Shown here piece by piece: positions 4,782 through 64,000 of a stretch of DNA of 64,000 nucleotides. The DNA lies in NCBI GenBank assembly GCA_965202585.1, contig OZ241828.1, forward strand, positions 79,050,001 through 79,114,000. Direction: 5' to 3'. A program made the position numbers and the translations under genes. The notes below the pieces were generated by a model. It did not search any database. It saw only the letters and a list, made by a program, of their open reading frames with translations, and was not told the DNA's origin. Source of the stretch: Thalia democratica. Lineage: Eukaryota. Every line of letters starts with the position of its first letter. Positions within the stretch are counted from its first letter, which is position 1.

Positions 4782-5149
4782 GTAACTGTTTTTTTTTATG
4801 GAATTCACAGTAAATGATTTATATATGTTATAATTAATTAACTTATCTTATCTTTAAAAAAAGTACTGCATAGGTATGATTTATAAAAAATTAAACAACC
4901 TTGATAGTTTGATTATTTAATGTTTTTTATATCTGTTCAAACAAACAGCACATATACGCTTCTAAATTTTAAGGAAGTATGTACACTCACATCAATTTTT
5001 AAAACTTTTAGTTAACCTTATGTACATATTTATTTAATCCGATTTTAAAAAAATCAAAAGAGAAAAATATAATTTTGTTTAAAGTTATACCAGAGAACCA
5101 AAACAATCAGATACTATTTAAGAACACGTCTTAAACAATATTCAAAAAG

Positions 5150-5315
5150 GTCCCGTGGGGAGTGAGACGGCTGCTGAACTACATCAAAGAAAAATACAAC
5201 GACCCGGAAATTATAATCACCGAGAACGGAGTTTCTGAAGGGGGAGATTCCCATGAACTGGACGATTATTGGAGGAAGGAGTATTACGTCGGTTACCTCA
5301 ACGAAGTTCTTAAAG
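5150..5315 (+). CDS. GH1 gene exon containing the catalytic nucleophile motif ITENG
   Basis: caaaaag|GTC CCG TGG GGA...AAA G|gttttg; VPWGVRRLLNYIKEKYNDPEIIITENGVS...YLNEVLK; phase 0 in, phase 1 out, consistent with neighbours. Confidence 0.93.
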
Positions 5316-5630
5316 GTTTTGAAATAATTTCTTATTTAGGTATTGTATTAAAATATGTGTTGAAGGCTTTATGACATTTTTTTTCATTTGTTTTAAGTAT
5401 TTACCTTGTATTTAACTTGACAATTATTTATAACTATTTTGTTTATATTGTTCTAACTTAACGAATTGATGAATTTCTTTACTTTGTTTATACAAAATAT
5501 GCTATATTTTACTCTAGTTTGATTTATTTAAAGTTTAAACTCTGACTAGAATCATAATAGGTTTTAAAGAACTCTACAAAAATAAACAATACTAACTACT
5601 TAAACTTTGTTTACGACTAAGAACACATAG

Positions 5631-5804
<174 letters not shown>

Positions 5805-6130
5805 TAAATAAATAACAAATCACTTTTTTTAAAACATATCTTGTCTAGAACATTTATATTTTCATAATATTACAGACTTAATAAATTAATTTGTGATTTT
5901 ATATCGTTTTACAACTCGAATGTTTATACTATCTACTTCTTAGCTCAATTATAAAAAACTCGCTAAGCATTGTTAAATTACTTGTTGCTTTTACAAAAAA
6001 GTAAAAACTTGGTGTTCTTTGTTCATCAAGTTTTTTATTACTTTATGTTTTTATTTTTCATTGATTTTAAATTGTTTATGCTATTTAATCGTTGAATTAT
6101 TTTTATCAAAATCGATATTTCTTCCCAAAG

Positions 6131-6288
6131 GTTCGGCATGCACTGGTTGAACTTCAGCGACCCTCAGCTGACGAGGGTGGCGAAACAATCGGTTGAATGT
6201 TACAAGCAGATTGTGAGGGAAAACAAATTTCCGTCGGGTGGCGTCGAAGAGCTGCAATATTGCGAAAGAAACGTCAACCTCGACCCTG
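6131..6288 (+). CDS. GH1 gene exon (RFG motif, end of TIM barrel)
   Basis: cccaaag|G TTC GGC ATG CAC...CCT G|gttggt; (R)FGMHWLNFSDPQLTRVAKQSVECYKQIVRENKFP...LDP. Confidence 0.9.
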
Positions 6289-6644
6289 GTTGGTTATAGA
6301 CTTTGTTCAAGCATAGTTTGACTTTTAACAACCATTTTAACTAAGTAGCAAGTTTTTGTACAATCTTACAACAGTTTATTTTTTGTAATTTTGTTCTTAT
6401 AATATTTTATGGGTAAAATTTTAATCTATTTTTAGTGCTCAACTTGATTTTTAAGAAGCCAAACTGAGTTAAACGATTTAAATGATGCTTATGTTAGTGT
6501 ATTTTTGGTAAAAAATGATTTATAAACAACGTAAATTTCTCAAATTACCTTTGAAACAAGAACTTGGAACATTTGAAAATGAAAAAGTGCTGTATTTGGG
6601 ATCAATAATGTTATACTTAAAATCATTTCAACCTCATTTTACAG

Positions 6645-6809
6645 TACTTCCTCCTGAGAAACCTGACGGTGGCGAGGTCGGTGAGGTGTTTTCAGTGAAT
6701 TTCCTTGGCAACGAGCTTGATTCAGATTCAGCCCTGACCGCGTTGAACGCGTTGTTTGGTGTTTCTATTGCTCTCTTCTGCATGTTCATATTTGGATCAA
6801 TTTATTCAG
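6645..6809 (+). CDS. GH1 gene exon encoding stalk and transmembrane helix
   Basis: ttacag|TA CTT CCT...TCA G|gtaatt; ...FLGNELDSDSALTALNALFGVSIALFCMFIFGSIYS, a hydrophobic stretch resembling the LPH FLG..ALYVLF anchor. Confidence 0.85.
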
Positions 6810-7300
6810 GTAATTGTTACTGAATTTATTTTGAAAAATTTGTGATATAGTTTGATAATCAAAAAACAGATTTTGTCAGAAATACTTTATTAAAATATTT
6901 AAGTTAGTAGTTATTAAATAAACAAGAGTTACCTGATGTGTTGATACAATTTCAATTAACAAATTAGTTTTATAAAGTTTAAAACTTAATTGTAAGGTTT
7001 TATTAAACTTAATTTTACACGTATATTAAAAAAAGTATAACTGTAAACTTTGATAACATAAGTTTTTTAATGGTGTTTATATACGATAGAGAAACAGTTT
7101 GTACTGTCTATTAATAAAATAAAAATGATATGCTATTTGATTTATTGTTGAACAACTTATATTTTACTTCAATTTAATTTAACAAATTTATTCAGTAATT
7201 TATATATACAATAACTACTAGAAAAATTGAAGTTATGATGTTATTTGTTACTTATTAAACTTTTATACTACTTGTATGACAACAATTTGTTTATATTTAG

Positions 7301-7386
7301 GATACAAAATAAAGAAAGCAAAAAAGTCAAAGAGGTACAGAGAAGATCTTCACGGTAAAGAAAACGTCAGTATGTCTGCTATTTAA
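7301..7386 (+). CDS. GH1 gene terminal exon (basic stop-transfer cytoplasmic tail)
   Basis: atttag|GA TAC AAA ATA AAG...ATT TAA; (G)YKIKKAKKSKRYREDLHGKENVSMSAI*, phase-compatible, Lys/Arg cluster right after the TM helix. Confidence 0.8.
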
Positions 7387-7470
7387 AACCTTTATGACGT
7401 AATATTTCGCACAGTTTTTTTTTTATACTCTTTATTTGTTTACTTTTTTTTTTGTTGGTTTTTTGTCTTT

Positions 7471-7476
7471 AATAAA
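7471..7476 (+). promoter_or_regulatory. Probable polyadenylation signal of the GH1 gene
   Basis: AATAAA 85 nt after the stop codon, after a U-rich tract; the motif is common in AT-rich DNA. Confidence 0.4.
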
Positions 7477-8949
7477 CTTGTTATAAATTTTAGCCTTTCT
7501 ATTGTGATACATACAAAGACTTTTATATACAATATTTTAAATTAACATTGCATTTTACTAAGGAAGGGTGGCGTCGTTTCAGATGTGGTAAAAAATAGAT
7601 CCTTGCGGGCCAAATCATTTTAACCTTATTCTATTTATATAACATTTATAATAATTTCATAACTATTTAGTCGAAAATTGCTCAAAGTTCTTATTTCTTT
7701 AACAAATGAGAAAAAGAATTGAACTTTTTAATAATTTATCAAGTGTAATTTTTAGCTTCATTGAAACTGTACCGAGATCTTTCTTTTATCTATCCACATT
7801 AAGCCTAGAATGTCTAGTGTAAGTATTAGAGTTAACATAGCCAGGTTTACACGTTCTCTGGCTGCAGATTTACTTATTGCGGGCTGTGTTATCTGCAACT
7901 TTGTTAACATTTGCGGGCCTGTCATATATATTATGCAGTACTAGTTTAAAGCTTTAAACGAACACGTTTGAAAAATGATAACTTATATAACATTTTTTAC
8001 GTAAAAGTTGAAAGACTTTAGTTTTTGTTCAGTTTATCGTTTAAATACTACATTTAGGGTTATTTAAATTAAATAAATAAAATACTGAGCTTAGTAAACT
8101 TTCACTAATATGACTAGTTTGAACATTAGAGTTATGTTTTTCAAACATATTTTCAAAGGTATTAAAAATTTACTTTTTACATTCTAAAATTAAGTATTGC
8201 TACAAAATCTAGAGATGCAATATTTAAACTTATCATTTAATATGAGATTACTTAGTAAATAACAAAAAGGTGATTAATTCTTTACTTCTTAAAAATTAGA
8301 AAGTAAAACAAAATAAATAGGATAAAATCTTAAATAGTCTTACTTTGTATATAAGATTCACTCAAGCTTTTTACATCTTTATTTTCATAACATTGTTGTC
8401 TATTTCTTTTCAGCATATTGATAAACTTGTTGATATTAGCATGATATGTACTTGCTTTAAAAAAAAAAAACTAATTCAGAAAATTTCTATCTATTTATTT
8501 TATATGTGTTTCTTTCAAAGACTCATAACTAAAATATTTGTATTTATTTTGTTGTTTTTTCACTGGCTTACTTGTCTAAAATCATAATTGTTTGAATAAT
8601 AAAACCAGTGGTCGCCTTCTTTAGATATCATATCCATCAATAAATAAACAAGTTTCAGCACTCTTTGATAGAAATCAGATTTTAATATCATCAAAAAAAA
8701 GTATAGTTATTTAAAACGTTTACATTCAGTATTAAAATAATATTTTTAATCTAAGTGCGTACTTAACGCAAATGCGTACCTCTTAGTGTCCTTATCGATG
8801 TGCGTAGTGTAGTTGGTAAACAAATAAAGAGTATAAGATAGAAGTTAAGTAATGGTTTAAACAAGTAAATGTTATGAAAGAAGGTAGAAACATTTTTGAC
8901 TCTCTTGAGGTAGCCTTATACAAGTTTTTAAACACCAACATTTGAGCAT

Positions 8950-9585
8950 CATACGCGTATGCATAGTATTACACTATTAAGAGAGTGCTTTCACTCTGAA
9001 AAACGACAAGCTGACGACCTAGTCAGCTTAGGGATTTTATAATGCAAAGGTTATTGAAGAAAAGCCTAGACGTCGAGGCGGGTAGACGTCGTCAAGGCGG
9101 GTTAACTGGCAGTGTTTTTGCAGGCATATAGGTTATAGCTTGATTCGACGTGGCCGTCGACTCAAGCTGGCATCGAAAGAGCGCAGCTAAGCGTTAAAGG
9201 TCGTATAGCAGACCTCATTTAGTAAGTAGCGAGGGAAGGTGAAGCGAGAGCAAGGCAGGTACCGTCCTAAGCAAGCCATTGAGCATAAAAGCCGGTCTCT
9301 CGGAAGGCAGTTTATAAACGAGCTCTGACATGATTCAGCCCAGAAAAAAGTCTGTTTGAGTGCAGTATGATTGATTAAAGCATTTCTAGAGGTGAAGGTT
9401 CGGCCGGGGCGACTGAAGCAGAGTAGGCGAGATACTAGAAAATGCTAAGGCGAATCACTCAAAATGTAACAAGTAAAAAATCGGCTTAATCTCAATTAAG
9501 CTTTGAAAGTCAGAGGTCAGTAGAAGCGAAATGTTTTGCAAGGGAAGCAGGAGCTCCGAGAAAGCAATTGTAATAGAGGGGGGAG
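8950..9585 (+). other. GC-rich, purine-skewed, hairpin-rich non-coding block ending in polypurine tract AGAGGGGGGAG (copy 1)
   Basis: Stem-loops at 8982-8997, 9008-9029, 9137-9168 and 9379-9389/9435-9446; direct repeat tagacgtcg..aggcgggt x2; no ORF conserved across copies; PPT at 9575-9585 immediately followed by TGT. Confidence 0.7.
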
Positions 9586-9646
9586 TGTTTTTTAGAAAAA
9601 GTTGTTGAAAATGAAATGTTGGGTTGTAGGAAGGGTCAGTAGAATG

Positions 9647-9752
9647 TAGAAAGAAAAGTTGAAAAAAATTTGAGCAAAAAAGGCCTCCGAATTCGCCCGC
9701 GGGCGAATTCGGAGGCCTTTTTTGCTCAAATTTTTTTCAACTTTTCTTTCTA
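9647..9752. repeat. 106-bp perfect palindrome with no spacer (copy 1)
   Basis: TAGAAAGAAAAGTTGAAAAAAATTTGAGCAAAAAAGGCCTCCGAATTCGCCCG|CGGGCGAATTCGGAGGCC...TTTCTA; centre 9699/9700; checked base by base. Confidence 0.98.
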
Positions 9753-9762
9753 TGTTTTTTTC

Positions 9763-10000
9763 AAAGGCGTTCGACGAAAGTCGGATGCCTTTTTTTTACC
9801 CAAAGTTTTTTTCAATATTTTTTCAAAGGCGTTCGACGAAAGTCGGATGCCTTTTTTTTACCCAAAATTTTTTTCAATATTTTTCAAAGTCGTTCGACGA
9901 AAGTCGGATGCCTTTTTTTTTTACCCAAAATTTTTTGTTATATTTTTTCATAGGCGTTCGACGAAAGTCGGATGCCTTTTTTTTATCCAAAATTTTTTTT
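9763..10000 (+). repeat. Tandem array of 4 x ~62-bp units, each a 30-nt GAAA-tetraloop hairpin plus oligo-T
   Basis: AAAGGCGTTCGAC-GAAA-GTCGGATGCCTTT starting at 9763, 9825, 9886, 9950; spacers are near-identical T-rich sequence. Confidence 0.96.
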
Positions 10001-10160
10001 AAAGTATACCACAGTAATGACTTTTTTTCGATTATAATGATGTCTTAAGTTTTGAACGGTGCTGCCGAATAGTTAGCATCGTCTTTCTTACAAATTTTTA
10101 ATAAGGTTTGTTGGGGTTTCTAAATTTAATCTATCAATAGCCTTAACAGAAAAATATATT

Positions 10161-10680
10161 TAACTCTTGATACTTATAATAAGTTAAGATATATTCAAAA
10201 CAATGATAGTAGAAAGGGTTATTGTTTTTTGAAACATGTAATATAAAAATATTACAGACTTCAAAACCTTCTGTTATCATTTTCGGTTTTGAACTATAAA
10301 GATAATACTTTTCAACTAATTTTAATATGTTTAGGTATTTCTCTTTTCTATATAAACTATTTTTGAAGTTAAAAAATAAAAATATAATATTTATTGTAAA
10401 AATAAACCTTTAGTTAATTTAATTTCTATTTAATATTTTTATTTTTTTATATTATAACAAGTTAAGATATATTCAAAACTATGATAGTAGAAAGGTATAT
10501 TGTTTTTGAAACATGTAATATAAAAATATTACAGACTTCTAAACCTTCTGTTATCATTTTCGGTTTTGAATTATAAAGATAATACTTTTCACTAATTTTA
10601 ATATGTTAAGGTATTTCTTTTTTCTATATAAACTATTTTTGAAGTTAAAGAATAAAATTATAATATTTATTGTAAAAAAG
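10161..10680. repeat. 278-bp AT-rich tandem repeat, ~2 copies
   Basis: aagttaagatatattcaaaac recurs at 10,181 and 10,459. Confidence 0.92.
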
Positions 10681-12444
10681 ACCCAGAGCTAATTTTATTT
10701 CACAAATATGTGAGATTTTGTTACCAAGTACTGAAATTATTTATAACGGATAATTATAATAGAAAATCTAGAAGCTTAGGCAAGAAATATAGTTTCAAAA
10801 AATAAAACGAAACTAAATACCAAGTAAAAAATAAAATAAATATGAACCAGATACAATGCAGTTTTATTAGTAACATAGACAAAACGTTTCTTTTACATAA
10901 AATAAGTTATTTTCTGATTAGTTTCAAGTTTTAATATTGTTGAAAATAGCGATCAGTCATTTTACGCAATTTAATTATGTTATAGGCAGTATAAATATTT
11001 ACATTTTTCTACTATAAAACACTTCAACTAATTGTTTGCTTTTGCAACATTAGTATGTTGTTGTTTAGAAAATTATTACTGTGTTACTTTAGAAAGTTTA
11101 AAGAAAAGTTAGTTAGAAAGTTTTACTTGTTATACGTTACTTTTCTAGATTAACATTTTACTTTTTAGAATTAATTAAGTTCTACAAAAGTGTAAAACAT
11201 ATAAAACTTTTTATACATACTTTATTTCCTTTTTTCTAACTATTACAAACGGATAGTAATGTAGAACAACGTATTTGTTTTATTTTTAGAATTTTTTAAT
11301 TTCGATTAAACTTCATTCAGGACAAAAATGAGATTTTTGAATAATTTATAAACTAAATTTTACCCAATATTTACAACCTAATCGATACTACAACTAAATT
11401 AGCTTAGTACTGAAAAACATTTTATAACATAACTTTTAAAAACTAACAACTATTGACGTGAATAAACCTTTCAACTACAACTTATATAATTTGCAGTATA
11501 ACTTATATAAATACATGTTTTTATAATTAGTTGCATTAATAAACTCTTTTTATTAATATACGACATGAATGACTTAATTTCTAAACTAAGGCTCGAAACA
11601 ACTAACCTTGTAATGAATTAAAAGTAATTCTATCATAATTATAAGTAATTACATTAATAGTTTACTTTTATTACTATAAAATATCCATTTTTTAACTAAT
11701 TAGTCAACTTGTAGTGTAATTTAAGTAATTTTATTTTAAAGCGTAGTAATAATACTATCAAAAAGTCGAAACTTAAATCAGCGAATACATGTAGAATCAA
11801 GAATAATTAAATGCATTAAAACAATCAATTGCATTTAAAATTGGGATTTTATATTAATGAATAAACTTTAGATAACTACTCAAAATATAAATTTAAGTGT
11901 ATGTCAACAACAGATCCTGGTAAAACAACTTCATTGGAATATAAAATAAATAAAAATCTTACAGTAATCTAACTTTATTGTACCAAAATATGTTTCTGTG
12001 TGTTAACGGATTAACACACTTCAACTGGATTATGTAAAAATTAAATACTGTAATGAAAGAAATGAAAGAATAGAAGCTAAAGTAGGTCTAGATTAAATTA
12101 GACTTAATAATTACAATTAATATAAAGTTTTATAACAGTCGGATTTAACATTAAGTATTTTAGCTATTATTAACTATTAACCTCTAAAAATCTATAGAAA
12201 TTACTTTTATTTTAATGAATACATGTATACACCTACTTTAGCTTCTACTCGTAACTTTATTTAGATTACTGTATAATTTGTAGGCTTTAAATAAACATCG
12301 TAATACTTTTTTTTAAATATATTCTGTGAGAAGCATGAACTTTATTATTACAGTTTTAGATAAAAAATAGAACTATAGTTACACACAATCAATCTGTCAT
12401 ACTAGTTGTAATTTAATTTAGTAATTAATTAATTGTTTTTTAAT

Positions 12445-13340
12445 AGAACTATGTAACTGCAAAAACAAAAAACATCTTCTAGTTATGAACAAATGTAAAT
12501 CCATAATTTAATCTACAAAGCAATTGCCTCATCTGAGAAAAATTAAAATATGTCATTTATTGGATCCACTCGAAGACTTTTCAAGAACAGATTCTACGAA
12601 AGTCGAACATAGAGCATCATTTCCTAAACCAAGCAAGAAAAAGCCCTTCAACTGCCAAACTCGCCAACTACATATGAAAATTGTATGAAAAAGACGAAAA
12701 ATACACAATTAACTGGAAATGACTTAGACAAATCAACAGTATATTCAAACCAAACTTCAGTGCTCATTATGTAACCTACAAAGACTATACATAGCAAGTG
12801 CTAAATAATAATAATGAACTGGTTACACAGTGCCCTCATTACCCAAGGGAATATTTTTAGTTGATTCTTAATCGCATTAACTAAGTGCATTTTATTCTAT
12901 TTAATTAGTTGCTTCGTTATATTTATGTTTCAATTGGGTATATATGTTCGTTTTTAGATATACAACCTTTTCGTAAAAGACTATTTTTGGTTTTTAAAAT
13001 CCCCTATAAATCCTAATGTTTACAATTTTCAAAGCTTACTATGTAAAAAATATTGTTTTAATCTTGTACAAAACTAATTTTTTTTATAATGTACTTAGAT
13101 GATGTATAGTTAACAGAAGACAACAACTAAACTTACCTATATTTCGTTTTATTTTAATTTTTGTTAACTGCATGTTAATGGGCAGTCATATTTAAAACTT
13201 AAAATTATTTGTACGGGTGTATTATTTATAATTGCGTTATAATAATTCATGGCTATGCATTTTTTGTTTTTAAGCTTTTGTTTGCGTCTGACGAATTGCT
13301 CTGCAGAGAAACGGCGTAACGCAATAAGTTAAACAATAAA
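12445..13340 (+). mobile_element. 3' remnant of the Penelope-like element (about 2 kb deleted relative to unit 2 copies)
   Basis: From agaactatgtaactgc onward it matches 35,740 onward (Cys-rich linker, GIY-YIG relic, 3' region with hammerhead motif). Confidence 0.85.
13282..13324 (+). ncRNA. Minimal type I hammerhead ribozyme motif (best-preserved copy)
   Basis: Stem I TTGCGT/ACGCAA; core CTGACGA; stem II (T)TGC-tct-GCA(G) with A.A at 10.1/11.1; GAAA; short stem III AC-ggc-GT; predicted cleavage after GUA at 13,318. Confidence 0.72.
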
Positions 13341-14196
13341 TTAGTATATTATTATATCAAATTTAAAAACAAGTTTTAGTAATAAGTAATAAGTTTTCAA
13401 ATAGTTCTATGCTTTGTGTACATCTAAAAGCGTGCTGTTAAATTTTTTTAGTTATAACACAGAATAGGAAAAACAATTCATAACTTTTTTCAAGTACTTA
13501 TTTTCGTCAAAAAATGTTTTATATTTTTTTATTTTAACTTGCACTAAACAGTACGTTAAAGTTTAAATGTTTGTAAAAATATTCTATGTGCTCTTTTAAC
13601 TAGTAAAAAGTTAAATTGTTCAGCTTAAACTATACAAACAGCATACGATTATAAAGTATATACTTTCTTCGATATCCTTAATATTAACGCCTTTTAAAAA
13701 CATCTTAAAAACATTAAATGTCCAAAAAATTGCATTGAATATTGGGCAAGCAGTTTTATTATTTAAAAACCATTATAATGTACGTGTCGGATTTGCACGT
13801 TGCATCTTTTATTTCAGAAATTTATTATGGACTCTAAAAAAATAAAGCGTTTCATTTTCAAAATCCTTTACTACAGGGTTTTAGCAGCATTTATATTAAA
13901 TAAATATAAAAACCTATTAATTTTTATAACCATTGATTTTTTAAATATCTAAACAAAACATAATCTTTGACAATTTAATCGAATCACGGAATTTTTTTTT
14001 AAACTTAAAGGGCCACAACTCAAAAAGTATCTTTACATTAAAAATGCGTATGTGAGCTTTTTAATACCAAAAAAACTTTTTTTTTATTAAGTATTTGTTG
14101 AGATATGGATAAAATAAGTTTTGTAATATAGTAATTTTAAAATTTATATTAATAATTTTTTCTAAAATTAAAAAAAAAAATTCCAGGCATTTCTAA

Positions 14197-14565
14197 GACC
14201 AAGGGTCGGCAAATTGCGGCCGCAAGCAAATGTAGCCAACTAAACTAAACTATACTTTACGTTGATATTTTGTAGGATATTCAGTGTATTATGGTTAAAC
14301 CATGTTTAAAAGATTTCCATAAGTTTATTAAATTTAAGGTTTAGACTTAAAAACTTGGATAAGATTGATTAGAGTAGTGGTTTTTCCTTAAATGGCAATC
14401 TTAAATTTAGTCCAAAAAATATGTAGAGTTTTAACAGGCATTCCGTGTGTAGGTAAAAGTCATTTATAAGGACAAAATTAATGATACAAAACTTTTTTGT
14501 GTCTGACTAAAGCTAAAGCCAATACAATATTAAAGTACCACTAAAACTAAAACTGCGGCCCGCAA
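14197..14565. mobile_element. hAT-like MITE relic (copy at ~46,196-46,565; related gcgggcc motifs at ~7,600-7,920)
   Basis: ccaagggtcggcaaattgcggccgc resembles the CAGGGGTCGGCAAACTGCGGCCCGC end of hAT MITEs; internal aaactgcggcccgc. Confidence 0.33.
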
Positions 14566-15583
14566 AGATTTTAAACATTTAACTACTATAAGTTGAAAAC
14601 ATATTCTTAAAAGCGAAATGGTAATTTTACAAGCATTGATATAAAAATCTACAACCATAATAAAAAAAAAAGAGTATAGCTTGTTTATTAAAATGAATTA
14701 ACTTTTTTGGTTGAATCTTAGTTTAAGGCTAGAAACTGTGTTAAGTAGTATAACAACATTGTAAAGATATAGTAAATCTACGTTATTTTGTTTTTTAATT
14801 TAAAAAAGTTTTATGATGAAAAAAGTCTACATATATATGGTATATTTTTCGTGCCAAATTTAAACTTTACTACTTAAAATTATTTTTTTTTTAAATTCCA
14901 GGACTTTTAGTAATTTTCGTTCAAAATTCCACATATTTCTGAAGATTTCTCAAATTCAAGGTTTTTAAAGGATTCAAGGTTAAGTGGCCATCCTGCTATA
15001 TGTAAACAAACACTAGTTGAGAATATATAATAAAAACGAAAATTCTTTTTTATACAGGTTGAACTGTATCAGTGAAACACATTTTGTAAATGTTTTAATA
15101 ATGTTGAAATTCGATACAATAATTTAGATACTTAAACAGTTGTAACAGCGAAAATGCATACGACATTTGGTTAAGGAAAATAAAATTGAGTAACAGGGAT
15201 GCTGCTTTTTGAGTCAAAAAATTGTCCTGAGTGACCTTAAAGTGGGTAGGTGTCAAATTCGCACGAGCGGACAAACTTTTCATGAGGCTAAAACAAACGA
15301 AGGGAATAAACTGCACGAAAGCACTTTTGCACGAGGGGACGTAATTCCATAAATAGACATTTTTTCAGTTGAATTTTTCATTTGTTTATTTTTTATAACT
15401 TAACTTTTCTTTTAATTTTTACTATCACTGTTACCCCTAACCTTTACCATCGATCTGTAGCTTTCTTTTTTCTTCTTCTTAATTAATTTTTTTTTATTCA
15501 TTCATTTTTATTGTTTTTTGTTTAATAATTTTTTTTAGTATGAAATTTATCAAATTGAGTTGTTAAAGCAAACAATTATTTAC

Positions 15584-29083: not shown

Positions 29084-30052
29084 ATATAAAAGTTTTAAAA
29101 GACTAGTTTGAACATCTGAGTTATGTTTTTTAAACATATTTTAAAAGCTATTAAAACTTTACTTTTTTGAAGTCTACAAACATTCTAAATTTAAGTATTG
29201 CTACAAAATCTAGAGATGCAATATTTAAACTTATCGTTAAAAATGATATTACTTAGTAAATAACAAAAAGATGATTAATTCTTTACTTCTAAAAAACTAG
29301 AAACTAAAACAAAATAAATAGGATAAAATCTTAAATACTCTTACTTTGTTTGTAAGATTCACTCAAACTTTTTGCATCTTTATTTTCAGAAAATTGTTGT
29401 CTATTTCTTTTGAACATGTTGATAAACTTGTTGATAATAGCATGATATGTACTAGCTTAAAAAAAATAAAAGGTTAATTCAGAAAATATCTATCTGTTTA
29501 TTTTATATGTGTTTCTTTTAAAGACTCAAAACTTAAATATTTGTATTTATTTTGTTGTTTTTTCACTGGCTTAGTTGTCTGAAATCAAAATTATTTAAAT
29601 ACTAAAACCAGGGGTCGCCTTCTTTAGATATCATATCCTTCAATAAATAAATAAGTTTCAGCACTCTTTAATAGAAATGAGATATATATATATCATCAAT
29701 ATAAATACATTTTATTACTTGTATACTACAAATTATTAGAAACATACAAAAACTTGTAATATGTTAAACTGTAAGTTAGTGTGTAGAAAAGTTAAGACAA
29801 AGAGTATAGTTATACAAAACGTTTACATTCAGTATTTAAATAATATTTTTAATCTAAGTGCGTGCTTAACGCAAGTGCGTACCTCTTAGTGTCCTTATCG
29901 ATGTGCGTAGTGTAGTTGGTAAACAAATAAAGAGTATAAGATAGAAGTTAAGTAAAGGTATAAAAAAGTAAATGTTATGAAAGAAGATTGAAACATTTTT
30001 GACTCTCTTGAGGTAGCTTAATACAAGTTTTTAAACACCAACATTTGAGCAT

Positions 30053-30689
30053 CATACGCGTATGCATAATATTACACTATTAAGAGAGTGCTTTCACTCT
30101 GAAAAACGACAAGCTGACGACCTAGTCAGCTTAGGGATTTTATAATGCAAAGGTTATTGAAGAAAAGCCTAGACGTCGAGGCGGGTAGACGTCGTCAAGG
30201 CGGGTTAACTGGCAGTGTTTTTGCAGGCATATAGATTATAGCTTGAGTCGACGTGGCCGTCGACTCAAGCTGGCATCGAAAGAGCGCAGCTGAGCGTTAA
30301 AGGTCGTATAGCAGACCTCATTTAGTAGGTAGCGAGGGAAGGTGAAGCGAGAGCAAGGCAGGTACCGTCCTAAGCAAGCCATTGAGCATAAAAGCCGGTC
30401 TCTCGGAAGGCAGTTTATAAACGAGCTCTGACATGATTCAGCCCAGTAAAAAGTCGGTTTGAGTGCCAATATGATTGATTAAAGCATTTCTAGAGGTGAA
30501 GGTTCGGCCGGGGCGACTGAAGCAGAGTAGGCGAGGTACTAGAAAATGCTAAGGCGAAGCACTCAAAATGTAACAAGTAAAAAATCGGCAAAATCTCAAT
30601 TAAGCTTTGAAAGTCAGAGGTCAGTAGAAGCGAAATGTTTTGCGAGGGAAGCAGGAGCTCCGAGAAAGCAATTGTAATAGAGGGGGGAG
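30053..30689 (+). other. GC-rich hairpin block plus polypurine tract (copy 2)
   Basis: Homologous to 8,950-9,585; 14-bp stem agcttgagtcgacg/cgtcgactcaagct is perfect here. Confidence 0.7.
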
Positions 30690-30749
30690 TGTTTTTTCGA
30701 AAAAAATGTTGAAAATGAAATTTTGGGTAGTAGGAAGGGTCGGTAGAAT

Positions 30750-30857
30750 ATAGAAAGAAAAGTTGAAAAAAATTTGAGCAAAAAAGGCCTCCGAATTCGC
30801 CCGCGGGCGAATTCGGAGGCCTTTTTTGCTCAAATTTTTTTCAACTTTTCTTTCTAT
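30750..30857. repeat. Perfect palindrome (copy 2, 108 bp)
   Basis: Centre 30803/30804; the 106-bp core is identical to copy 1. Confidence 0.98.
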
Positions 30858-30866
30858 GTTTTTTTC

Positions 30867-31040
30867 AAAGGCGTTCGACGAAAGTCGGACGCCTTTTTTT
30901 TACCCAAAATTTTTTTCAATATTTTTTCAAAGGCGTTCGACGAAAGTCGGATGCCTTTTTTTTTACCCAAACTTTTTTTCAATACTTTTCAAAGGCGTTC
31001 GACGAAAGTCGGATGCCTTTTTTTTTACCCAAAATGTTTT
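30867..31040 (+). repeat. Tandem array of 3 x 62-bp hairpin units
   Basis: Hairpins start at 30867, 30929, 30991; the first has GGACGCC (G.U pair replaced by G-C). Confidence 0.96.
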
Positions 31041-31203
31041 TGAAGTATAACTCAGTAATGACTTTTTTTCGATTATAATGATGTGTTAAGTTTTGAACGG
31101 TGCTGCCGAAAGGTTAGCATCGTCTTTTTTTTTCAAATTTTTAATAAGGTTTGTTAGGGTTTCTAATTTTAAGCTATCAATAGCCTTAACAGAAAAATAT
31201 ATT

Positions 31204-32000
31204 TAACTCTCGATACTTATCATAAGTTAAGATATATTCAAAACAATGATATTAAAAAGGCTTATTGTTTTTTGAAACATGTAATATAAAAATATTACAA
31301 ACTTCAAAACCTTCTGTTATCATTTTCGGTTTTGAACTATAAAGATAATACTTTTCAACTAACTTTAATATGTTAAGGTATTTCTCTTTTCTATATAAAC
31401 TATTTTTGAAGTTAAAGAATAAAATTATAATATTTTTTGTAAAAATAAACCTTTAGTTAATTTAATTTTGATTTAATATATTAAACTCTTGATACTTATA
31501 ATAAGTTAAGATATATTTAAAATAAAGATAGTAGAAAGGCTTATTGTTTTTGAAACATGTAATATAAAAATATTACAAACTTCAAAACCTTCTGTTATCA
31601 TTTTCGGTTTTGAACTATAAAGATAATACTTTTCAACTAACTTTAATATGTTAAGGTATTTCTCTTTTCTATATAAACTATTTTTGAAGTTAAAGAATAA
31701 AATTATAATATTTTTTGTAAAAATAAACCTTTAGTTAATTTAATTTTGATTTAATATATTAAACTCTTGATACTTATAATAAGTTAAGATATATTCAAAA
31801 CAATGATAGTAGAAAGGGTTATTGTTTTTTGAAACATGTAATATAAAAATATCACAGACTTCAAAACCTTCTGTTATCATTTTCGGTTTTGAATTATAAA
31901 GATAATACTTTTTAACTAATTTTAATATGTTTAGGTTTTTTTTTTGTATAAACTATTTATGAAATTAAAGAATAAAATTATAATATTTATTGTAAAAAAA
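31204..32000. repeat. 278-bp AT-rich tandem repeat, ~3 copies
   Basis: aactctt...gatacttat recurs at ~31,205, 31,484 and 31,762. Confidence 0.92.
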
Positions 32001-33733
32001 GACCCAGAGCTAATTTTATTTCACAAATATGTGAGATTTTGTTACCAAGTACTAAAATTATTTATAGCAGATAATTATAATAGAAAATCTAGAAGCTTAG
32101 GCAAGCAATATAGTTTCAAAAAAATGAACGAAACTAAACACCAAGTAAAAAATATGAACCAGATACAATGCAGTTTTATTAGTAACATAGACAAAATTTT
32201 CTTTTACATAAAATCATTTATTTTCTGATTAGTTTCAAGTTTTGGTATTGTTGAAAATAGTGATCAGTCATTTTACGCAATTTAATTATGTTATAGGCAG
32301 TATAAGTATTTACATTTTTTCTATTATAAAACACTTTAACTAATTGTTTGCTTTTACAACATTAGTATGTTGTTGTTTAGAAAATTATTACTGTGTTACT
32401 TTAGAAAGTTTAAAGAAAAGTTAGTTAGAAAGTTTACTTGACAACATGTTATACGTTACTTTTGTAGATTAACATTTTACTTTTTAGAACTAATTAAGTT
32501 TTACAAAAGTGTAAAACATATAAAACTTTTTATACATACTTTATTTCCTTTTATCTAACTATTACAAACGGATAGTAAGGTAGAACAACGTATTTGTTTT
32601 AATTTTAGAATTTTTTAATTTCGATTAAACTTCATTCAGGACAAAAATGAGATTTTTGAATAATTTATAAACTATATTTTACCCAATATTTATAACCTAA
32701 TTGATACTACAACTAAATTAGCTTAGTACTGAAAAACTTTTTATAACATAACTTTTAAAAACTAACAACTATTGACGTGAATAAACCTTTCAACTACAAC
32801 TTATATAATTTGCAGTATAACTTATATACATACATGTTTTTATAATTAGTTGGATTAATAAACTCTTTTTATTATTAACGACATGAATGATTTAATTTCT
32901 AAATTAAGGCTTAAAATAAATAACCTTGTAATGAATTAAAAGTAATTCTATCATAATTATAAGTAGTTACATTCATAGTCTACTTTTATTACTATAAAAT
33001 ATCCATTTTTTAATTTATTAGTCAACTTGTAGTGTAATTTAAGTTATTTTATTTTAAAGCGTAGTAATAATACTATCAAAAAGTCGAAACTTAAATCAGC
33101 GAACACATGTAGAATCAAAAATAATTAAATGCATTAAAACAATCAATTGCATTTAAAATTGGGCTTTTATAATTATAAATAAACTTTAGATAACTACTCA
33201 AAATATAAATTTAAGTGTATGTCAACATCAGATCCTTGTAAAAAAACTTCACTAGAATATAAAATAAAAAAAAGATCTTACAGTAATCTATTTTATTGTA
33301 CCAAAATATGTTTCTGTGTGTCAACGGATTAACACACTCCAACTGGGTTCTGTAAAAATTAAATACTATAAGGAAAGAAATGAAAGAATATAAGCTAAAG
33401 TAGGTCTAGCTTAAGTTAGACTTAATAATTACAATTAATATAAAGTTTTATAACAGTCGGATTTAACATTAACTATTTTACCTATTATTAACTATTAACA
33501 TCTAAAAATCTATAGAAATTACTTTTATTTTAATGAATACATGTATACACCTACTTTAGCTTCTACTCGTTACTTTATTTAGATTACTGTGTTATTTATT
33601 AGCTTTAAATAAACATCGTAATACTTTTTTTTTAAATATATTCTGTGAGAAGCATGAAATTTTTTATTACAGTTTTAGAAAAAAAATAGAACTATAGTTA
33701 CACACAATCAATCTGTCATACTAGTTGTAATTT

Positions 33734-61070: not shown

Positions 61071-61938
61071 ATATAAAAGTTTTAAAGACTAGTTTGAACA
61101 TTTGATTTTTGTTTTTTAAACATGTTTTAAAAGCTATTAAAACTTTACTTTTTTGAAATCTAAAAACATTCTAAATTTAAGTATTGCTACAAAATCTAGA
61201 GGTGCAATATTTAAACTTATCATTTAAAATGAGATTATTTAGCAAATACCAAAAAGATGATTAATTCTTTACTTCTAAAATAATTAGAAACTAAAACAAA
61301 ATAAATAGGATAAAATCTTAAATAGTCTTACTTTGTTTATAAGATTCACTCAAACTTTTTGCATCTTTATTTTCAGAACATTGTTGTCTATTTCTTTTTA
61401 ACATATTGATAAACTTGTTGATATTAGCATGATATGTACTTGCTTTAAAAAAAAAAAACTAATTCAGAAAATTTCTATCTATTTATTTTATATGTGTTTC
61501 TTTCAAAGACTCATAACTAAAATATTTGTATTTATTTTGTTGTTTTTTCACTGGCTTACTTGTCTAAAATCATAATTGTTTGAATAATAAAACCAGTGGT
61601 CGCCTTCTTTAGATATCATATCCATCAATAAATAAACAAGTTTCAGCACTCTTTGATAGAAATCAGATTTTAATATCATCAAAAAAAAGTATAGTTATTT
61701 AAAACGTTTACATTCAGTATTAAAATAATATTTTTAATCTAAGTGCGTACTTAACGCAAATGCGTACCTCTTAGTGTCCTTATCGATGTGCGTAGTGTAG
61801 TTGGTAAACAAATAAAGAGTATAAGATAGAAGTTAAGTAATGGTTTAAACAAGTAAATGTTATGAAAGAAGGTAGAAACATTTTTGACTCTCTTGAGGTA
61901 GCTTAATACAAGTTTTTAAACACCAACATTTGAGCATC

Positions 61939-62570
61939 ATACGCGTATGCATAGTATTACACTATTAAGAGAGTGCTTTCACTCTGAAAAACGACAAGCT
62001 GACGACCTAGTCAGCTTAGGGATTTTATAATGCAAAGGTTATTGAAGAAAAGCCTAGACGTCGAGGCGGGTAGACGTCGTCAAGGCGGGTTAACTGGCAG
62101 TGTTTTTGCAGGCATATAGATTATAGCTTGAGTCGACGTGGCCGTCGACTCAAGCTGGCATCGAAAGACCGCAGCTGAGATAAGGTCGTATAGCAGACCT
62201 CATTTAGTAAGTAGCGAGGGAAGGTGAAGCGAGAGCAAGGCAGGTACCGTCCTAAGCAAGCCATTGAGCATAAAAGCCGGTCTCTCGGAAGGCAGTTTAT
62301 AAACGAGCTCTGACATGATTCAGCCCAGAAAAAAGTCTGTTTGAGTGCAGTATGATTGATTAAAGCATTTCTAGAGGTGAAGGTTCGGCCGGGGCGACTG
62401 AAGCAGAGTAGGCGAGATACTAGAAAATGCTAAGGCGAATCACTCAAAATGTAACAAGTAAAAAATCGGCTTTATCTCAATTAAGCTTTGAAAGTCAGAG
62501 GTCAGTAGAAGCGAAATGTTTTGCAAGGGAAGCAGGAGCTCCGAGAAAGCAATTGTAATAGAGGGGGGAG
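61939..62570 (+). other. GC-rich hairpin block plus polypurine tract (copy 3)
   Basis: Homologous to 8,950-9,585; PPT at 62,560-62,570. Confidence 0.7.
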
Positions 62571-62631
62571 TGTTTTTTAGAAAAAGTTGTTGAAAATGAA
62601 ATGTTGGGTTGTAGGAAGGGTCAGTAGAATG

Positions 62632-62737
62632 TAGAAAGAAAAGTTGAAAAAAATTTGAGCAAAAAAGGCCTCCGAATTCGCCCGCGGGCGAATTCGGAGG
62701 CCTTTTTTGCTCAAATTTTTTTCAACTTTTCTTTCTA
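62632..62737. repeat. 106-bp perfect palindrome (copy 3)
   Basis: Identical to copy 1. Confidence 0.98.
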
Positions 62738-62747
62738 TGTTTTTTTC

Positions 62748-63050
62748 AAAGGCGTTCGACGAAAGTCGGATGCCTTTTTTTTACCCAAAGTTTTTTTCAA
62801 TATTTTTTCAAAGGCGTTCGACGAAAGTCGGATGCCTTTTTTTTACCCAAAGTTTTTTTCAATATTTTTTCAAAGGCGTTCGACGAAAGTCGGATGCCTT
62901 TTTTTTACCCAAAATTTTTTTCAATATTTTTCAAAGTCGTTCGACGAAAGTCGGATGCCTTTTTTTTTTACCCAAAATTTTTTGTTATATTTTTTCATAG
63001 GCGTTCGACGAAAGTCGGATGCCTTTTTTTTATCCAAAATTTTTTTTAAA
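62748..63050 (+). repeat. Tandem array of 5 x ~62-bp hairpin units
   Basis: Hairpins start at 62748, 62810, 62872, 62933, 62997. Confidence 0.96.
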
Positions 63051-63207
63051 GTATACCACAGTAATGACTTTTTTTCGATTATAATGATGTCTTAAGTTTT
63101 GAACGGTGCTGCCGAATAGTTAGCATCGTCTTTCTTACAAATTTTTAATAAGGTTTGTTGGGGTTGCTAAATTTAATCTATCAATAGCCTTAACAGAAAA
63201 ATATATT

Positions 63208-63725
63208 TAACTCTTGATACTTATAATAAGTTAAGATATATTCAAAACAATGATAGTAGAAAGGGTTATTGTTTTTTGAAACATGTAATATAAAAATATT
63301 ACAGACTTCAAAACCTTCTGTTATCATTTTCGGTTTTGAACTATAAAGATAATACTTTTCAACTAATTTTAATATGTTTAGGTATTTCTCTTTTCTATAT
63401 AAACTATTTTTGAAGTTAAAAAATAAAAATATAATATTTATTGTAAAAATAAACCTTTAGTTAATTTAATTTCTATTTAATATTTTTATTTTTTTATATT
63501 ATAACAAGTTAAGATATATTCAAAACTATGATAGTAGAAAGGTATATTGTTTTTGAAACATGTAATATAAAAATATTACAGACTTCTAAACCTTCTGTTA
63601 TCATTTTCGGTTTTGAATTATAAAGATAATACTTTTCACTAATTTTAATATGTTAAGGTATTTCTTTTTTCTATATAAACTATTTTTGAAGTTAAAGAAT
63701 AAAATTATAATATTTATTGTAAAAA
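63208..63725. repeat. 278-bp AT-rich tandem repeat, ~2 copies
   Basis: Matches 10,161-10,680. Confidence 0.92.
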
Positions 63726-64000
63726 AGACCCAGAGCTAATTTTATTTCACAAATATGTGAGATTTTGTTACCAAGTACTGAAATTATTTATAACGGATAA
63801 TTATAATAGAAAATCTAGAAGCTTAGGCAAGAAATATAGTTTCAAAAAATAAAACGAAACTAAATACCAAGTAAAAAATAAAATAAATATGAACCAGATA
63901 CAATGCAGTTTTATTAGTAACATAGACAAAACGTTTCTTTTACATAAAATAAGTTATTTTCTGATTAGTTTCAAGTTTTAATATTGTTGAAAATAGCGAT

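What the first reader, a model, noticed from the sequence alone, without database searches (positions are those of the whole stretch)
8950..10680. Recurring non-coding module: structured GC block, PPT|TG, perfect palindrome, GNRA-hairpin array, 278-bp repeat
Seen: the same ordered ~1.7 kb module opens each array unit (also 30,053-32,000 and 61,939-63,725), has no conserved ORF, and is the most structured DNA in the window. Several cues favour the + strand: purine skew, PPT followed by TG, G.U-compatible hairpins, oligo-T after hairpins. Established: LTR retroelements have a polypurine tract abutting a TG-initiated 3' LTR; baculovirus hr regions (tandem repeats with ~30-bp imperfect palindromes) and HSV-1 oriL (144-bp perfect palindrome) act as origins or enhancers. 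Inference: this may be the 3' end of an uncharacterised non-autonomous LTR-type element, or an origin/enhancer- or terminator-like cis module. I cannot match it to a named family.
Basis: partly seen in the sequence, partly recalled or inferred. Interest (0 to 1): 0.8.

Follow-up and report, generated by a model that had tools for sequence, protein, structure and literature searches.

The report
Dispersed non-coding cassette with 28S patches
The recurring 1.5-kb non-coding module is real. It is one copy of a genome-wide cassette family: a conserved GC-rich body, a perfect palindrome and stacked terminator-like RNA hairpins, tagged with a 19-base copy of the animal's own 28S rRNA gene at the site that rDNA-specific elements cut. 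It is not the end of an LTR element.

Summary
**Observation confirmed.** All five described parts are present at about 8696-10700, 29749-32022 and 61684-63750.

**Distribution.** This is not a local oddity. One 27-mer from the GC block occurs 133 times and a 22-mer from its 5' end 462 times in the 800-Mb genome, with 0 hits for reversed controls. Nearly all copies sit one per unit in arrays of 17-60 kb period on at least six chromosomes. Arrays on C7 and at C4:34.8 Mb share only about 8750-10256 with this window, so the module is the conserved entity.

**New here.**
- Window 8897-8915 is identical to the genome's own 28S rDNA at the R2/I-PpoI site. Most other lineages carry an inverted second copy after the hairpins.
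- The palindrome is perfect in every array lineage, but its sequence differs between lineages.
- The GAAA hairpins covary and have G.U pairs only on the + strand.

**Interpretation.**
- LTR reading rejected. It is also not a Penelope-like element part, no Rfam family matches, and no bacterial or viral match was found.
- Best reading (0.45): a gene-less promoter-leader-terminator cassette linked to rDNA and read on the + strand.
- An earlier follow-up calls it a copy of the rDNA promoter and terminator. I could not verify that.
- The scan had found this family before on other DNA.

The parts
8750..8896 (+). Upstream AT-rich region, weakly conserved in all lineages, with two TGCGTAC(C) boxes. 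Possible promoter or upstream element.
   Evidence: Homology with the C7 and C4:34.8 lineages starts at 8750-8759. Mean pairwise identity is 0.59-0.60 against 0.33 further upstream. Boxes seen in the alignment.
8897..8915 (+). M: TGACTCTCTTGAGGTAGCC, a 19-nt patch identical to this genome's own 28S rDNA across the R2 / I-PpoI (L1925) cleavage site.
   Evidence: 3 matches in the window against 0 in shuffles. It is the best conserved block, 0.96. The same 19-mer continues as 28S sequence in 252 rDNA copies. There are 545 exact copies genome-wide and 0 for the control.
8935..9592 (+). Conserved GC-rich, G-skewed body ('leader'), ending in a G-run plus T6 (9574-9592). It contains local hairpins, a cUUCGg-type loop in most lineages, and several loop-less 6-10-bp palindromes.
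   Evidence: Mean pairwise identity is 0.86-0.89 among 7 lineages. Alifold gives 144 pairs, 7 with double changes. Covariation is slightly above shuffles. MFE z = +0.22 on + and -3.05 on -. The + strand is more stable in all 12 copies.
9647..9752 (.). Spacer-less perfect palindrome (53-nt arms) with A6 on the left and T6 on the right. It looks like a terminator on both strands.
   Evidence: 100% complementary here. It is 98-100% complementary in the C1, C7, C779 and C4:34.8 lineages, each with a different sequence. It is degenerate only in the isolated C6:11.89 Mb copy.
9763..10000 (+). Four tandem 62-bp units, each a 10-13-bp hairpin with a GAAA loop followed by T8 and ACCCAAA. These look like stacked intrinsic terminators.
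   Evidence: Terminator scan. Across 12 distinct variants 97.5% of cells are paired against 86.7 +/- 2.1 in shuffles (0/500), with 3 pairs changed on both sides and many G-C to G.U changes. G.U 28 against A.C 2, and 1 hit on the opposite strand.
10056..10095 (+). A further conserved hairpin (GAAA loop in most lineages, GAAT here) followed by a T-rich run, still inside the part shared with the C7 lineages.
   Evidence: Alignment columns 1751-1800. Homology with C7 runs to 10256-10283.
10084..10700 (+). 278-bp tandem repeat (2.2 copies here, more in copy 2). Only its first 100-170 bp belong to the part shared with C7. The tandem duplication is specific to the C4/C6/C1 context.
   Evidence: Family D1..
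29749..32022 (+). Second copy of the whole module (palindrome at 30751-30856; 3 hairpin units).
61684..63750 (+). Third copy of the whole module (palindrome at 62632-62737; 5 hairpin units).

Best explanation
The module is one member of a dispersed family of gene-less, non-coding cassettes. There are at least 133 full copies, and about 460 places carry its 5' block.

**Layout, read on the + strand:**
- a weakly conserved upstream region;
- a 19-nt patch of the animal's own 28S rDNA at the R2/I-PpoI site;
- a strongly conserved, roughly 0.65-kb G-rich body;
- a perfect palindrome that looks like a terminator in both directions;
- one to five GAAA-loop hairpins, each followed by a T8 tract;
- in most lineages, a second 28S patch.

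**Proposed working.** I read it as a self-contained transcription unit (promoter-like 5' part, structured leader RNA, stacked terminators) that derives from, or is functionally tied to, the ribosomal DNA system. In this window it simply rides along, one copy per unit of a 21-32-kb macrosatellite.

**Shown:** the anatomy, copy number, boundaries, 28S identity, covariation of the hairpins and palindrome, and the + strand polarity of the hairpins.

**Inferred:** that it is transcribed, that the hairpin/T-tracts stop transcription, and which polymerase reads it.

that the 5' part and the hairpins are copies of the rDNA promoter and terminator.
For: - **Copy number.**, all with 0 control hits.
- **Only the module is shared between otherwise unrelated array units.** Window 8750-10256 against C7, and 8759-9936 against C4:34.8.
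- **Conservation profile.** It peaks on M (0.96) and the GC block (0.86-0.89), against about 0.6 for alignable flanks.
- **M matches the 28S.** It equals the genome-specific 28S variant (TTGAGG), found in 252 rDNA copies.
- **Hairpins.** The GAAA loop is kept while the stems covary. 97.5% of cells are paired (0/500 shuffles reach this). G.U pairs occur only on the + strand.
- **T8 follows every hairpin in all lineages**.
- **Palindrome.** Perfect, but different in sequence in each lineage.
- **RNA-library contigs.** Contigs from two marine metatranscriptomes tile 8894-9576 and 9964-10212 at 85-95% identity (table 8).
- **Earlier follow-up.** s1-311131 reports the rDNA promoter and terminator identity.
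Against: - **rDNA homology not checked.** No rDNA contig is among the 40 best matches to the whole cassette (down to 81%) or to its 5' block (down to 93%).
- **The GC block is not more stable than shuffles on the + strand**, and its covariation is weak. Several of its palindromes have no loop, which suggests protein-binding DNA sites and not RNA hairpins.
- **The RNA evidence is weak.** It is contigs only, from mixed samples, and DNA carry-over is not excluded. A few such contigs also lie outside the module.
- **Possible premature stop.** A T5 run sits inside the body in the C4/C6/C1 lineages. It would stop RNA polymerase III early.
- **The palindrome has no G.U pairs.** This points to maintenance at the DNA level, not selection on the RNA.
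Confidence: 0.45

Rival explanations
1. Non-autonomous retroelement moved by the genome's R2 elements (SIDE-like). An RNA that carries 28S target sequence at its ends is copied into nicked target-like sites. The GC block would hold the 5' ribozyme and the protein-binding structures.
For: - R2 RNAs of many animals carry 9-36 nt of 28S, or 21-26-bp 28S duplications, at their 5' end, and these propagate (PMC3774820).
- SIDEs are short, non-coding derivatives with only the R2 ends (PMC3414825).
- M is exactly this site.
- The cassette has sharp boundaries in unrelated contexts.
- The C1 lineage has direct M repeats.
- Earlier first-stage notes place such a hairpin array directly upstream of an R2 ORF (untested).
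Against: - Copies are not in 28S genes.
- M spans both sides of the R2 nick, not one side.
- The second patch is inverted in most lineages.
- Homology extends about 150 bp beyond M and about 400 bp beyond M'.
- No HDV-like ribozyme or R2 RNA element at E<=10.
- No R2 ORF lies next to any of the 8 lineages held.
- Searches for interrupted GAGG|TAGC sites gave only 1 hit each (the second pattern sampled only about a quarter of possible junctions).
- The earlier follow-up s1-311131 rejected R2 mobilisation.
Confidence: 0.15
2. The cassette is a cis-acting DNA element that provokes local recombination or re-replication and so seeds the 17-60-kb macrosatellites. It would work like the yeast rDNA hotspot HOT1, or through nicking of M by the R2 endonuclease.
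For: - At least 14 separate arrays on six chromosomes each carry one cassette per unit, while their units share nothing else.
- About half of the independent loci are arrays.
- The 15-kb segment shared by the C4, C6 and C1 arrays and by C6:11.89 Mb always starts within about 100 bp of the cassette's 5' edge.
- Arrays contain orientation flips (C2 92.6-94.0 Mb, C1 93.2-93.4 Mb).
- The cassette combines a long perfect palindrome with an endonuclease target.
Against: - Other macrosatellites without any known link to the cassette are common in this genome (first-stage notes), so hitch-hiking is not excluded.
- The baseline share of the genome in such arrays was not measured.
- At least a dozen copies are isolated.
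- The + strand polarity of the hairpins is not needed for a DNA-level element.
Confidence: 0.15
3. A lineage-specific multicopy gene for a structured non-coding RNA of about 0.7-1.1 kb with its own promoter and terminators, unrelated to rDNA apart from the short 28S-like box.
For: The body is highly conserved compared with its flanks. GNRA and UUCG-type loops, + strand G.U pairs and T-tract ends are present. RNA-library contigs lie over the body.
Against: - A 19-nt exact identity to the most famous rDNA target site, plus a second copy, is unlikely to be a chance promoter box.
- The body's fold is not better than shuffles on the + strand.
- No Rfam family matches.
- Constraint measured against co-duplicated flanks is modest: 83% against 75-81% for C1.
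Confidence: 0.15
4. One reading: the 3' end of a non-autonomous LTR-type retroelement (polypurine tract abutting a TG-initiated LTR).
For: A purine run AGAGGGGGGAG followed by TG exists at 9574-9590.
Against: - Homology in every lineage runs through this point.
- No direct repeat of the downstream part exists at element-scale distance. The next copies are a whole array unit away.
- No PBS or gag-pol.
- The G-run differs between lineages.
Confidence: 0.02

Closest known systems
rDNA orphons and spacer-derived dispersed repeats (promoter/terminator pieces of the ribosomal intergenic spacer outside the nucleolar organiser)
   Same: Gene-less and non-coding. Repeated terminator-like units next to a promoter-like block. 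GC-richer than the host genome. Carries an exact piece of the host 28S. Dispersed and locally amplified.
   Different: The 28S piece is 19 nt from the middle of the gene, at the R2/I-PpoI site, and is duplicated at both ends, usually inverted. There is a perfect 106-118-bp palindrome. Similarity to the spacer itself was not verified here.
R2 retrotransposon 5' ends with 28S extensions, and R2 SIDEs (PMC3774820, PMC3414825)
   Same: A short 28S patch from exactly this site at the 5' end. About 1 kb, non-coding, structured RNA. Propagated as many copies.
   Different: Copies are not inserted in 28S. The patch crosses the nick. The 3' patch is inverted. No ribozyme or R2 3' UTR was detected. No R2 ORF is adjacent.
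Intrinsic (hairpin plus U-tract) terminators of bacteria and T7-type polymerases, and T-tract termination by RNA polymerase III
   Same: A GC-rich stem, a stable GNRA loop and an immediate T8 tract, stacked in tandem. The palindrome has A6/T6 on its two sides, like a bidirectional terminator.
   Different: The host is an animal nuclear genome. No bacterial or viral relative was found. Function is untested.
Yeast HOT1 (rDNA promoter plus enhancer/terminator fragment that stimulates recombination when placed elsewhere; from my own knowledge)
   Same: If the rDNA origin holds, the same two kinds of component lie side by side outside rDNA, and the flanking DNA is tandemly amplified.
   Different: A functional analogy only. 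No evidence here for polymerase I activity or recombination stimulation.
Penelope-like element pseudo-LTRs and retrozymes (PMC8557442, PMC4209133)
   Same: The cassette lies directly 5' of a tandem Penelope-like element in the C4/C6/C1/C779 context.
   Different: No hammerhead motif. No similarity to an intact Hydra-clade element of the same genome. The C7 and C4:34.8 copies have no such neighbour.

Membership tests
LTR retrotransposon (3' end: PPT + LTR) | Two direct long terminal repeats flanking an internal region | tested here: not met
   The only other copies of the sequence downstream of 9588 are one array unit (21-32 kb) away, together with the whole module.
LTR retrotransposon (3' end: PPT + LTR) | The element or LTR boundary lies at the PPT|TG junction | tested here: not met
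   Homology in 8 lineages runs from about 8750 to about 10256, straight across 9588.
LTR retrotransposon (3' end: PPT + LTR) | gag-pol or its remnants, and a PBS | tested here: not met
   No such ORFs or Pfam hits. The neighbouring RT is of the Penelope-like Hydra clade.
Penelope-like element pLTR / retrozyme | Hammerhead ribozyme motif and sequence identity to the element's own 3' part | tested here: not met
   No hammerhead at E<=10. No similarity to the intact element L021.
R2 SIDE | Located in the 28S gene at the R2 site | tested here: not met
   Copies lie in non-rDNA arrays on C1-C7. Only 19 nt of 28S flank them.
R2 SIDE | HDV-like self-cleaving ribozyme at the 5' end | tested here: inconclusive
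   No HDV-type family at E<=10, but Rfam models detect R2 ribozymes poorly. No dedicated fold search was run.
R2 SIDE | 3' end identical to the 3' UTR of a resident R2 | not tested
rDNA spacer-derived unit (mini-rDNA / orphon) | Exact sequence of the host's rRNA gene | tested here: met
   M equals the 28S R2-site sequence, including the genome-specific G.
rDNA spacer-derived unit (mini-rDNA / orphon) | Homology to the rDNA promoter region and to the terminators downstream of 28S | not testable with these tools
rDNA could not be fetched. rDNA contigs are absent from the 40 best matches.
Intrinsic-terminator-type hairpins | Stable GC-rich stem-loop followed at once by a T/U tract on the transcribed strand | tested here: met
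   4 sites on the + strand at 9763-9977, against 1.1 expected. Covariation and + strand G.U pairs.
Intrinsic-terminator-type hairpins | Transcripts end there | not testable with these tools
   Only contigs of mixed RNA libraries were available. These cannot show ends.
TIR DNA transposon / MITE | Terminal inverted repeats at the very ends, plus a target-site duplication | tested here: not met
   M and M' are inverted in the C7, C779 and C4:34.8 lineages. However, homology extends beyond both, M' is direct in C1 and absent here, and no duplication is seen at the edges.
Viral or plasmid origin palindromes (baculovirus hr, HSV oriL) | Sequence relation to a virus, or an origin function | tested here: not met
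   No exact motif match in viral contigs. Origin function is not testable here.

The most novel reading that the evidence does not exclude
A 28S-site-tagged, rDNA-like cassette (promoter-like block, palindrome, terminator stack) acts as a portable amplification hotspot. Wherever it lands, breaks or stalled forks at the palindrome or at the R2-cleavable patch drive unequal exchange. This would build the gene-bearing 17-60-kb macrosatellites that are so frequent in this genome.
Probability: 0.15. Interest if true: 0.85.

Novelty: new variant of a known kind. Interest (0 to 1): 0.6.

Why it matters
If the cassette is a displaced piece of the ribosomal DNA control region, this genome holds hundreds of natural 'promoter plus terminator, no gene' units outside the nucleolar organisers, each still carrying an intact target for rDNA-specific endonucleases.

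That would make three questions directly testable:
- whether such units are transcribed and by which polymerase;
- whether R2 uses them as landing sites outside rDNA;
- whether they help create the large gene-carrying tandem arrays (Kelch, glycosidase and others) that mark this fast-evolving marine animal genome.

The palindrome is also unusual. It stays perfect while its sequence changes, so some DNA-level mechanism must keep a long spacer-less palindrome symmetric in an animal genome.

Tried and rejected
- **Rfam.** Nothing at gathering score in the window or in 13 related loci. At E<=10 there were only generic long-hairpin microRNA hits on the palindrome, and no hammerhead, HDV, rRNA or snRNA family. 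No tRNA.
- **Public collections.** Exact-motif scans of metagenome contigs (2), viral contigs (2) and bacterial/archaeal genomes (1) all gave 0 hits.
- **Penelope-like element link.** The 4.36-kb tandem next to the module is a decayed Hydra-clade element (RWK, DKT, YRDD, CxCX5C, GIY-YIG seen in an intact relative). It shares nothing with the module and is absent beside the C7 and C4:34.8 copies.
- **Kelch link.** The BACK-Kelch ORF lies beside the module only in some C4 units.
- **rDNA homology.** Two DNA searches with a singleton lineage did not bring up rDNA contigs.
- **R2 junctions.** Patterns for interrupted GAGG|TAGC sites gave only 1 hit each. My second pattern was badly designed: a trailing G samples only a quarter of possible junctions.
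- **Sensitive BLAST.** A very permissive BLAST scoring scheme gave only AT-rich junk alignments at about 53% identity and was discarded.
- **Edges of shared segments.** The 3' edge of the 15-kb segment shared by C4, C6 and C1, and the edges of the C7 shared segment, show no terminal signature of a transposon.
- **CpG.** The observed/expected ratio is about 1 everywhere and says nothing.
- **Depth.** Depth figures from read laying are per contig and were not used to rank expression.
Full report
**Observation.** The window is AT-rich (about 24-27% GC) and consists of a large tandem array. The module recurs at about 8696-10700, 29749-32022 and 61684-63750, spaced 21.1 and 31.9 kb.
- a GC-richer, G-skewed block at 8935-9592 (45% GC);
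- a G-run plus T6 at 9574-9592;
- a spacer-less 106-bp perfect palindrome at 9647-9752;
- a 62-bp-period array of GAAA-loop hairpins, each followed by T8 (4, 3 and 5 units in the three copies);
- a 278-bp tandem repeat.

No ORF is conserved. The ORFs listed inside it run over the palindrome and hairpin repeats, and the lineages differ by 1-, 5- and 11-nt indels.

One claim is only partly right. The GC block as a whole folds no better than dinucleotide shuffles on the + strand (z = +0.22; - strand z = -3.05). It is the palindrome and the hairpins that are exceptional.

**Surroundings.** The window is G000:C4:79.05-79.11 Mb of an 800-Mb genome. Each unit also holds:
- exons of a glycoside hydrolase family 1 gene (4566-5374, +);
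- in two of three units, a BACK-Kelch ORF on the - strand (27620-29011, 59619-61070);
- one to three copies of a 4.36-kb tandem repeat (11285, 32604, 36969, 41324).

The 4.36-kb repeat carries a decayed ORF. Intact relatives of that ORF elsewhere in the genome (687-733 aa, in 2735-bp tandems) show the RWK, DKT, YRDD, CxCX5C and GIY-YIG marks of the Hydra clade of Penelope-like elements (PMC8557442). The intact element has a hammerhead-like CUGAUGA...GAAAC stretch and shares nothing with the module. The module is therefore not part of that retroelement.

**Distribution.**
- The invariant 27-mer of the GC block occurs 133 times at up to 3 mismatches.
- A 22-mer of its 5' end occurs 462 times at up to 2 mismatches.
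- Reversed controls give 0 in both cases.
- DNA searches raise 468-556 candidate places.

Copies lie in clusters with 17-60-kb spacing:
- C1: 93.2-93.4 Mb
- C2: 21.6, 22.15-22.2 and 92.6-94.0 Mb (with orientation flips)
- C4: 78.5-79.2 Mb
- C5: 0.72-0.78, 64.7-64.9 and 65.7-66.1 Mb
- C6: 2.07-2.55, 19.6-19.7, 64.6-65.5 and 65.8-66.1 Mb
- C7: 9.43-9.53, 36.5-36.6 and 41.6-41.8 Mb

There are also a dozen or more isolated copies.

Two whole-genome runs give about 4-8 times more summed contig depth over 8800-10000 than over the flanks. This fits a copy number well above that of this array alone. This is a depth-based estimate and should be read only as a rough indication.

**What is shared.**
- The C6 and C1 arrays, the isolated C6:11.89-Mb copy and contig C779 share a longer collinear segment with the window. 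It always begins within about 100 bp of 8696-8750 and, in C1 and C6, ends near 23,500-23,700.
- The C7 arrays (76% identity) share only 8750-10256/10283. The C4:34.78-Mb/C476 lineage shares only 8759-9936. Their flanks are unrelated at standard BLAST sensitivity.
- Mean pairwise identity among seven lineages is 0.96 for M, 0.86-0.89 for the GC block, 0.81 for the palindrome, about 0.6 for the alignable AT-rich parts and 0.33 beyond 8750.

The module, not the macro-unit, is therefore the conserved or mobile entity.

**The 28S patch.** The invariant 19-mer TGACTCTCTTGAGGTAGCC (8897-8915) has an inverted second copy after the first hairpin(s) in the C7, C779 and C4:34.78 lineages, about 880-900 bp downstream. 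In C1 the same roughly 25 bp stands in direct orientation. In the C4 and C6 arrays it is missing.

An earlier follow-up of this scan (s1-280115) said that the ends of a 1.08-kb cassette in an intron are copies of a 28S site. I tested this. The genome holds 252 copies of TGACTCTCTTGAGGTAGCCAAATGCCTCGTCATC at 15.1-15.8-kb spacing on rDNA contigs and at the starts of C9 and C10. The patch is therefore identical to the animal's own 28S, including its G where other animals have A in TTAAGG (from my own knowledge of the R2 and I-PpoI sites). It spans the R2 nick (GAGG|TAGC).

The 19-mer has 545 exact copies, of which about 293 lie outside rDNA. M' drifts without compensating change in M. M is therefore held to the 28S sequence, not to pairing with M'.

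**Palindrome and hairpins.** In each array lineage the palindrome is 98-100% self-complementary over 53-59-nt arms, yet the lineages differ:
- in the GC centre (GGCCTCC..., GCCCTCC..., GCCGTCC..., and an unrelated GCCCCCGACGAGACGCCG...);
- in the A/T-run lengths of the outer arms.

Only the isolated C6:11.89-Mb copy has unmatched changes. There is not a single G.U-type pair, so the symmetry is kept at the DNA level or is needed on both strands.

The small hairpins behave differently. Across 12 distinct variants:
- the GAAA loop and the T8 tract are kept;
- 97.5% of cells pair, against 86.7 +/- 2.1 in shuffles (0/500) and at most 49% when the partner is slid;
- three pairs change on both sides;
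- most variation is G-C to G.U;
- G.U cells outnumber A.C by 28 to 2, and the mirror scan of the other strand finds one hit.

This is the signature of selection on a single-stranded + strand copy, most simply RNA. The right arm of the palindrome and the hairpin units have the same tail (T-run, ACCCAAA-like box, T-run). The palindrome is therefore the first unit of the array, with an inverted tail on its left.

**GC block.** It has local hairpins with a few compensatory changes. One example is GCTTGAGTCGACG...CGTCGACTCAAGC, which becomes GCTCGAATCGACG...CGTCGATTCGAGC in C779. Most lineages have a cUUCGg-type loop. The + strand is more stable by 19-47 kcal/mol in all 12 copies. Against this:
- covariation is only slightly above shuffles (0.062 against 0.051);
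- G.U and A.C counts are similar for structures predicted on either strand;
- several palindromes have no loop (ATACGCGTAT, GACGTC twice, GAGCTC, GGAGCTCC), as expected for protein-binding DNA.

Whether this part works as RNA or as DNA remains open.

**Transcription.** Only assembled contigs of two marine metatranscriptomes were available. They lie at 8894-8982, 8969-9103, 9098-9269, 9135-9301, 9273-9445, 9403-9576, 9964-10119 and 9970-10212 at 85-95% identity. A few more lie downstream (10967-11149, 11390-11566) and on a very high-copy repeat at 11800-12400. This is compatible with transcription in related animals but does not prove it. Contigs show neither strand nor ends, and DNA carry-over is possible.

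**What it is not.**
- Not the 3' end of an LTR element (see the membership rows).
- Not a Penelope-like pLTR or retrozyme.
- Not a TIR transposon with M/M' as termini, because homology extends beyond both.
- Not a known RNA family.
- Not of recognisable bacterial or viral origin.

**Most likely working.** I commit to a self-contained, gene-less transcription cassette tied to the rDNA system and read on the + strand. It has a promoter-like 5' part (8750 to about 8990, including M), a conserved leader of about 0.65 kb, then a bidirectional palindromic stop and a fail-safe stack of hairpin/T-tract stops. Confidence is 0.45.

A second earlier follow-up (s1-311131) states that such 1.1-kb elements are about 200 dispersed copies of this animal's rDNA promoter and terminator, bordered by 28S patches. 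It adds that they are neither disguised targets nor R2-mobilised. I could confirm only the 28S patch. The rDNA itself could no longer be fetched, and rDNA contigs are not among the 40 best matches to the cassette. Any similarity must therefore be partial, or below 81% for the whole cassette and below 93% for the 5' block.

**Rivals.**
- An R2-dependent SIDE-like retroelement (0.15). R2 RNAs of many animals carry and propagate 28S extensions of this size (PMC3774820).
- A recombination or amplification hotspot that seeds the arrays (0.15). This is not exclusive of the main reading.
- An independent non-coding RNA gene family (0.15).
- The LTR reading (0.02).

**Novelty.** The scan has met this family before on other DNA (s1-280115, s1-311131, s1-311143, s1-311364 and probably s1-311485). 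New here are:
- its systematic one-per-unit presence in many unrelated macrosatellites;
- the lineage comparison showing that only the cassette is shared;
- the lineage-specific yet perfect palindromes;
- the + strand polarity and covariation of the hairpins;
- the conservation peak on the 28S patch.

I know of no description of such a cassette in the literature I could search. It is best filed as a new variant of rDNA-derived or rDNA-site-associated dispersed elements.

Noticed in passing
window 11285-15600, 32604-45700: A 4.36-kb tandem repeat (1 or 3 copies per unit) carries a decayed Hydra-clade Penelope-like element ORF. Intact relatives of 687-733 aa stand in 2735-bp tandems, e.g. L021:3315-5378 and 5930-8113, with a hammerhead-like CUGAUGA...GAAAC stretch between ORFs that Rfam does not score above gathering.
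   Followed up: partly
window 27620-29011 and 59619-61070 (-): BTB-less BACK-Kelch ORFs (463 and 483 aa), divergent from the module and about 740 bp away. Absent upstream of the first module copy and beside all non-C4 lineages.
   Followed up: partly
window 4566-4817 and 5162-5374 (+): Two exon-like ORFs matching glycoside hydrolase family 1 (profile positions 270-393 of 453). Part of the C4-specific portion of the array unit.
   Followed up: no
window 11800-12400: A very high-copy short repeat. Summed contig depth is about 50-100 times that of neighbouring sequence in two genomic runs, with many junctions and opposite-strand joints. Probably a SINE- or MITE-like element.
   Followed up: no
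G000 rDNA contigs (e.g. C26, C37, C79; starts of C9 and C10): All 252 assembled 28S copies read CTCTTGAGGTAGC at the R2/I-PpoI site, G in place of the usual A, which removes the TTAA. Only one assembled copy has anything other than TAGCC after GAGG. Unit spacing is 15.1-15.8 kb with some irregular gaps.
   Followed up: partly
L010:5315-5345 versus L029:5180-5215: In the C1 lineage the 3' copy of the 28S patch, together with about 3 nt on each side, is the exact in-place inversion of the copy in the C7 lineage.
   Followed up: partly
G000:C2:92.58-94.01 Mb: The largest cluster, about 37 cassette copies over 1.4 Mb, changes orientation twice (+ block, - block, + block). This suggests large inverted duplications inside the array.
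   Followed up: no
G000:C1:82330186/82330213, C1:82373584/82373611, C5:15880268/15880295, C5:16030009/16030036: Pairs of exact 28S patches 27 bp apart on one strand, recurring 43-150 kb apart, at places that did not appear among the listed GC-block motif hits. They may be another cassette type using the same patch.
   Followed up: no
L013:3900-4145 (G000:C338): This copy of the module is 5'-truncated at window position 9034 and preceded by unrelated sequence with its own hairpin plus T-run (TTTCGCCGGCTCCGCCGGCGAAA).
   Followed up: no
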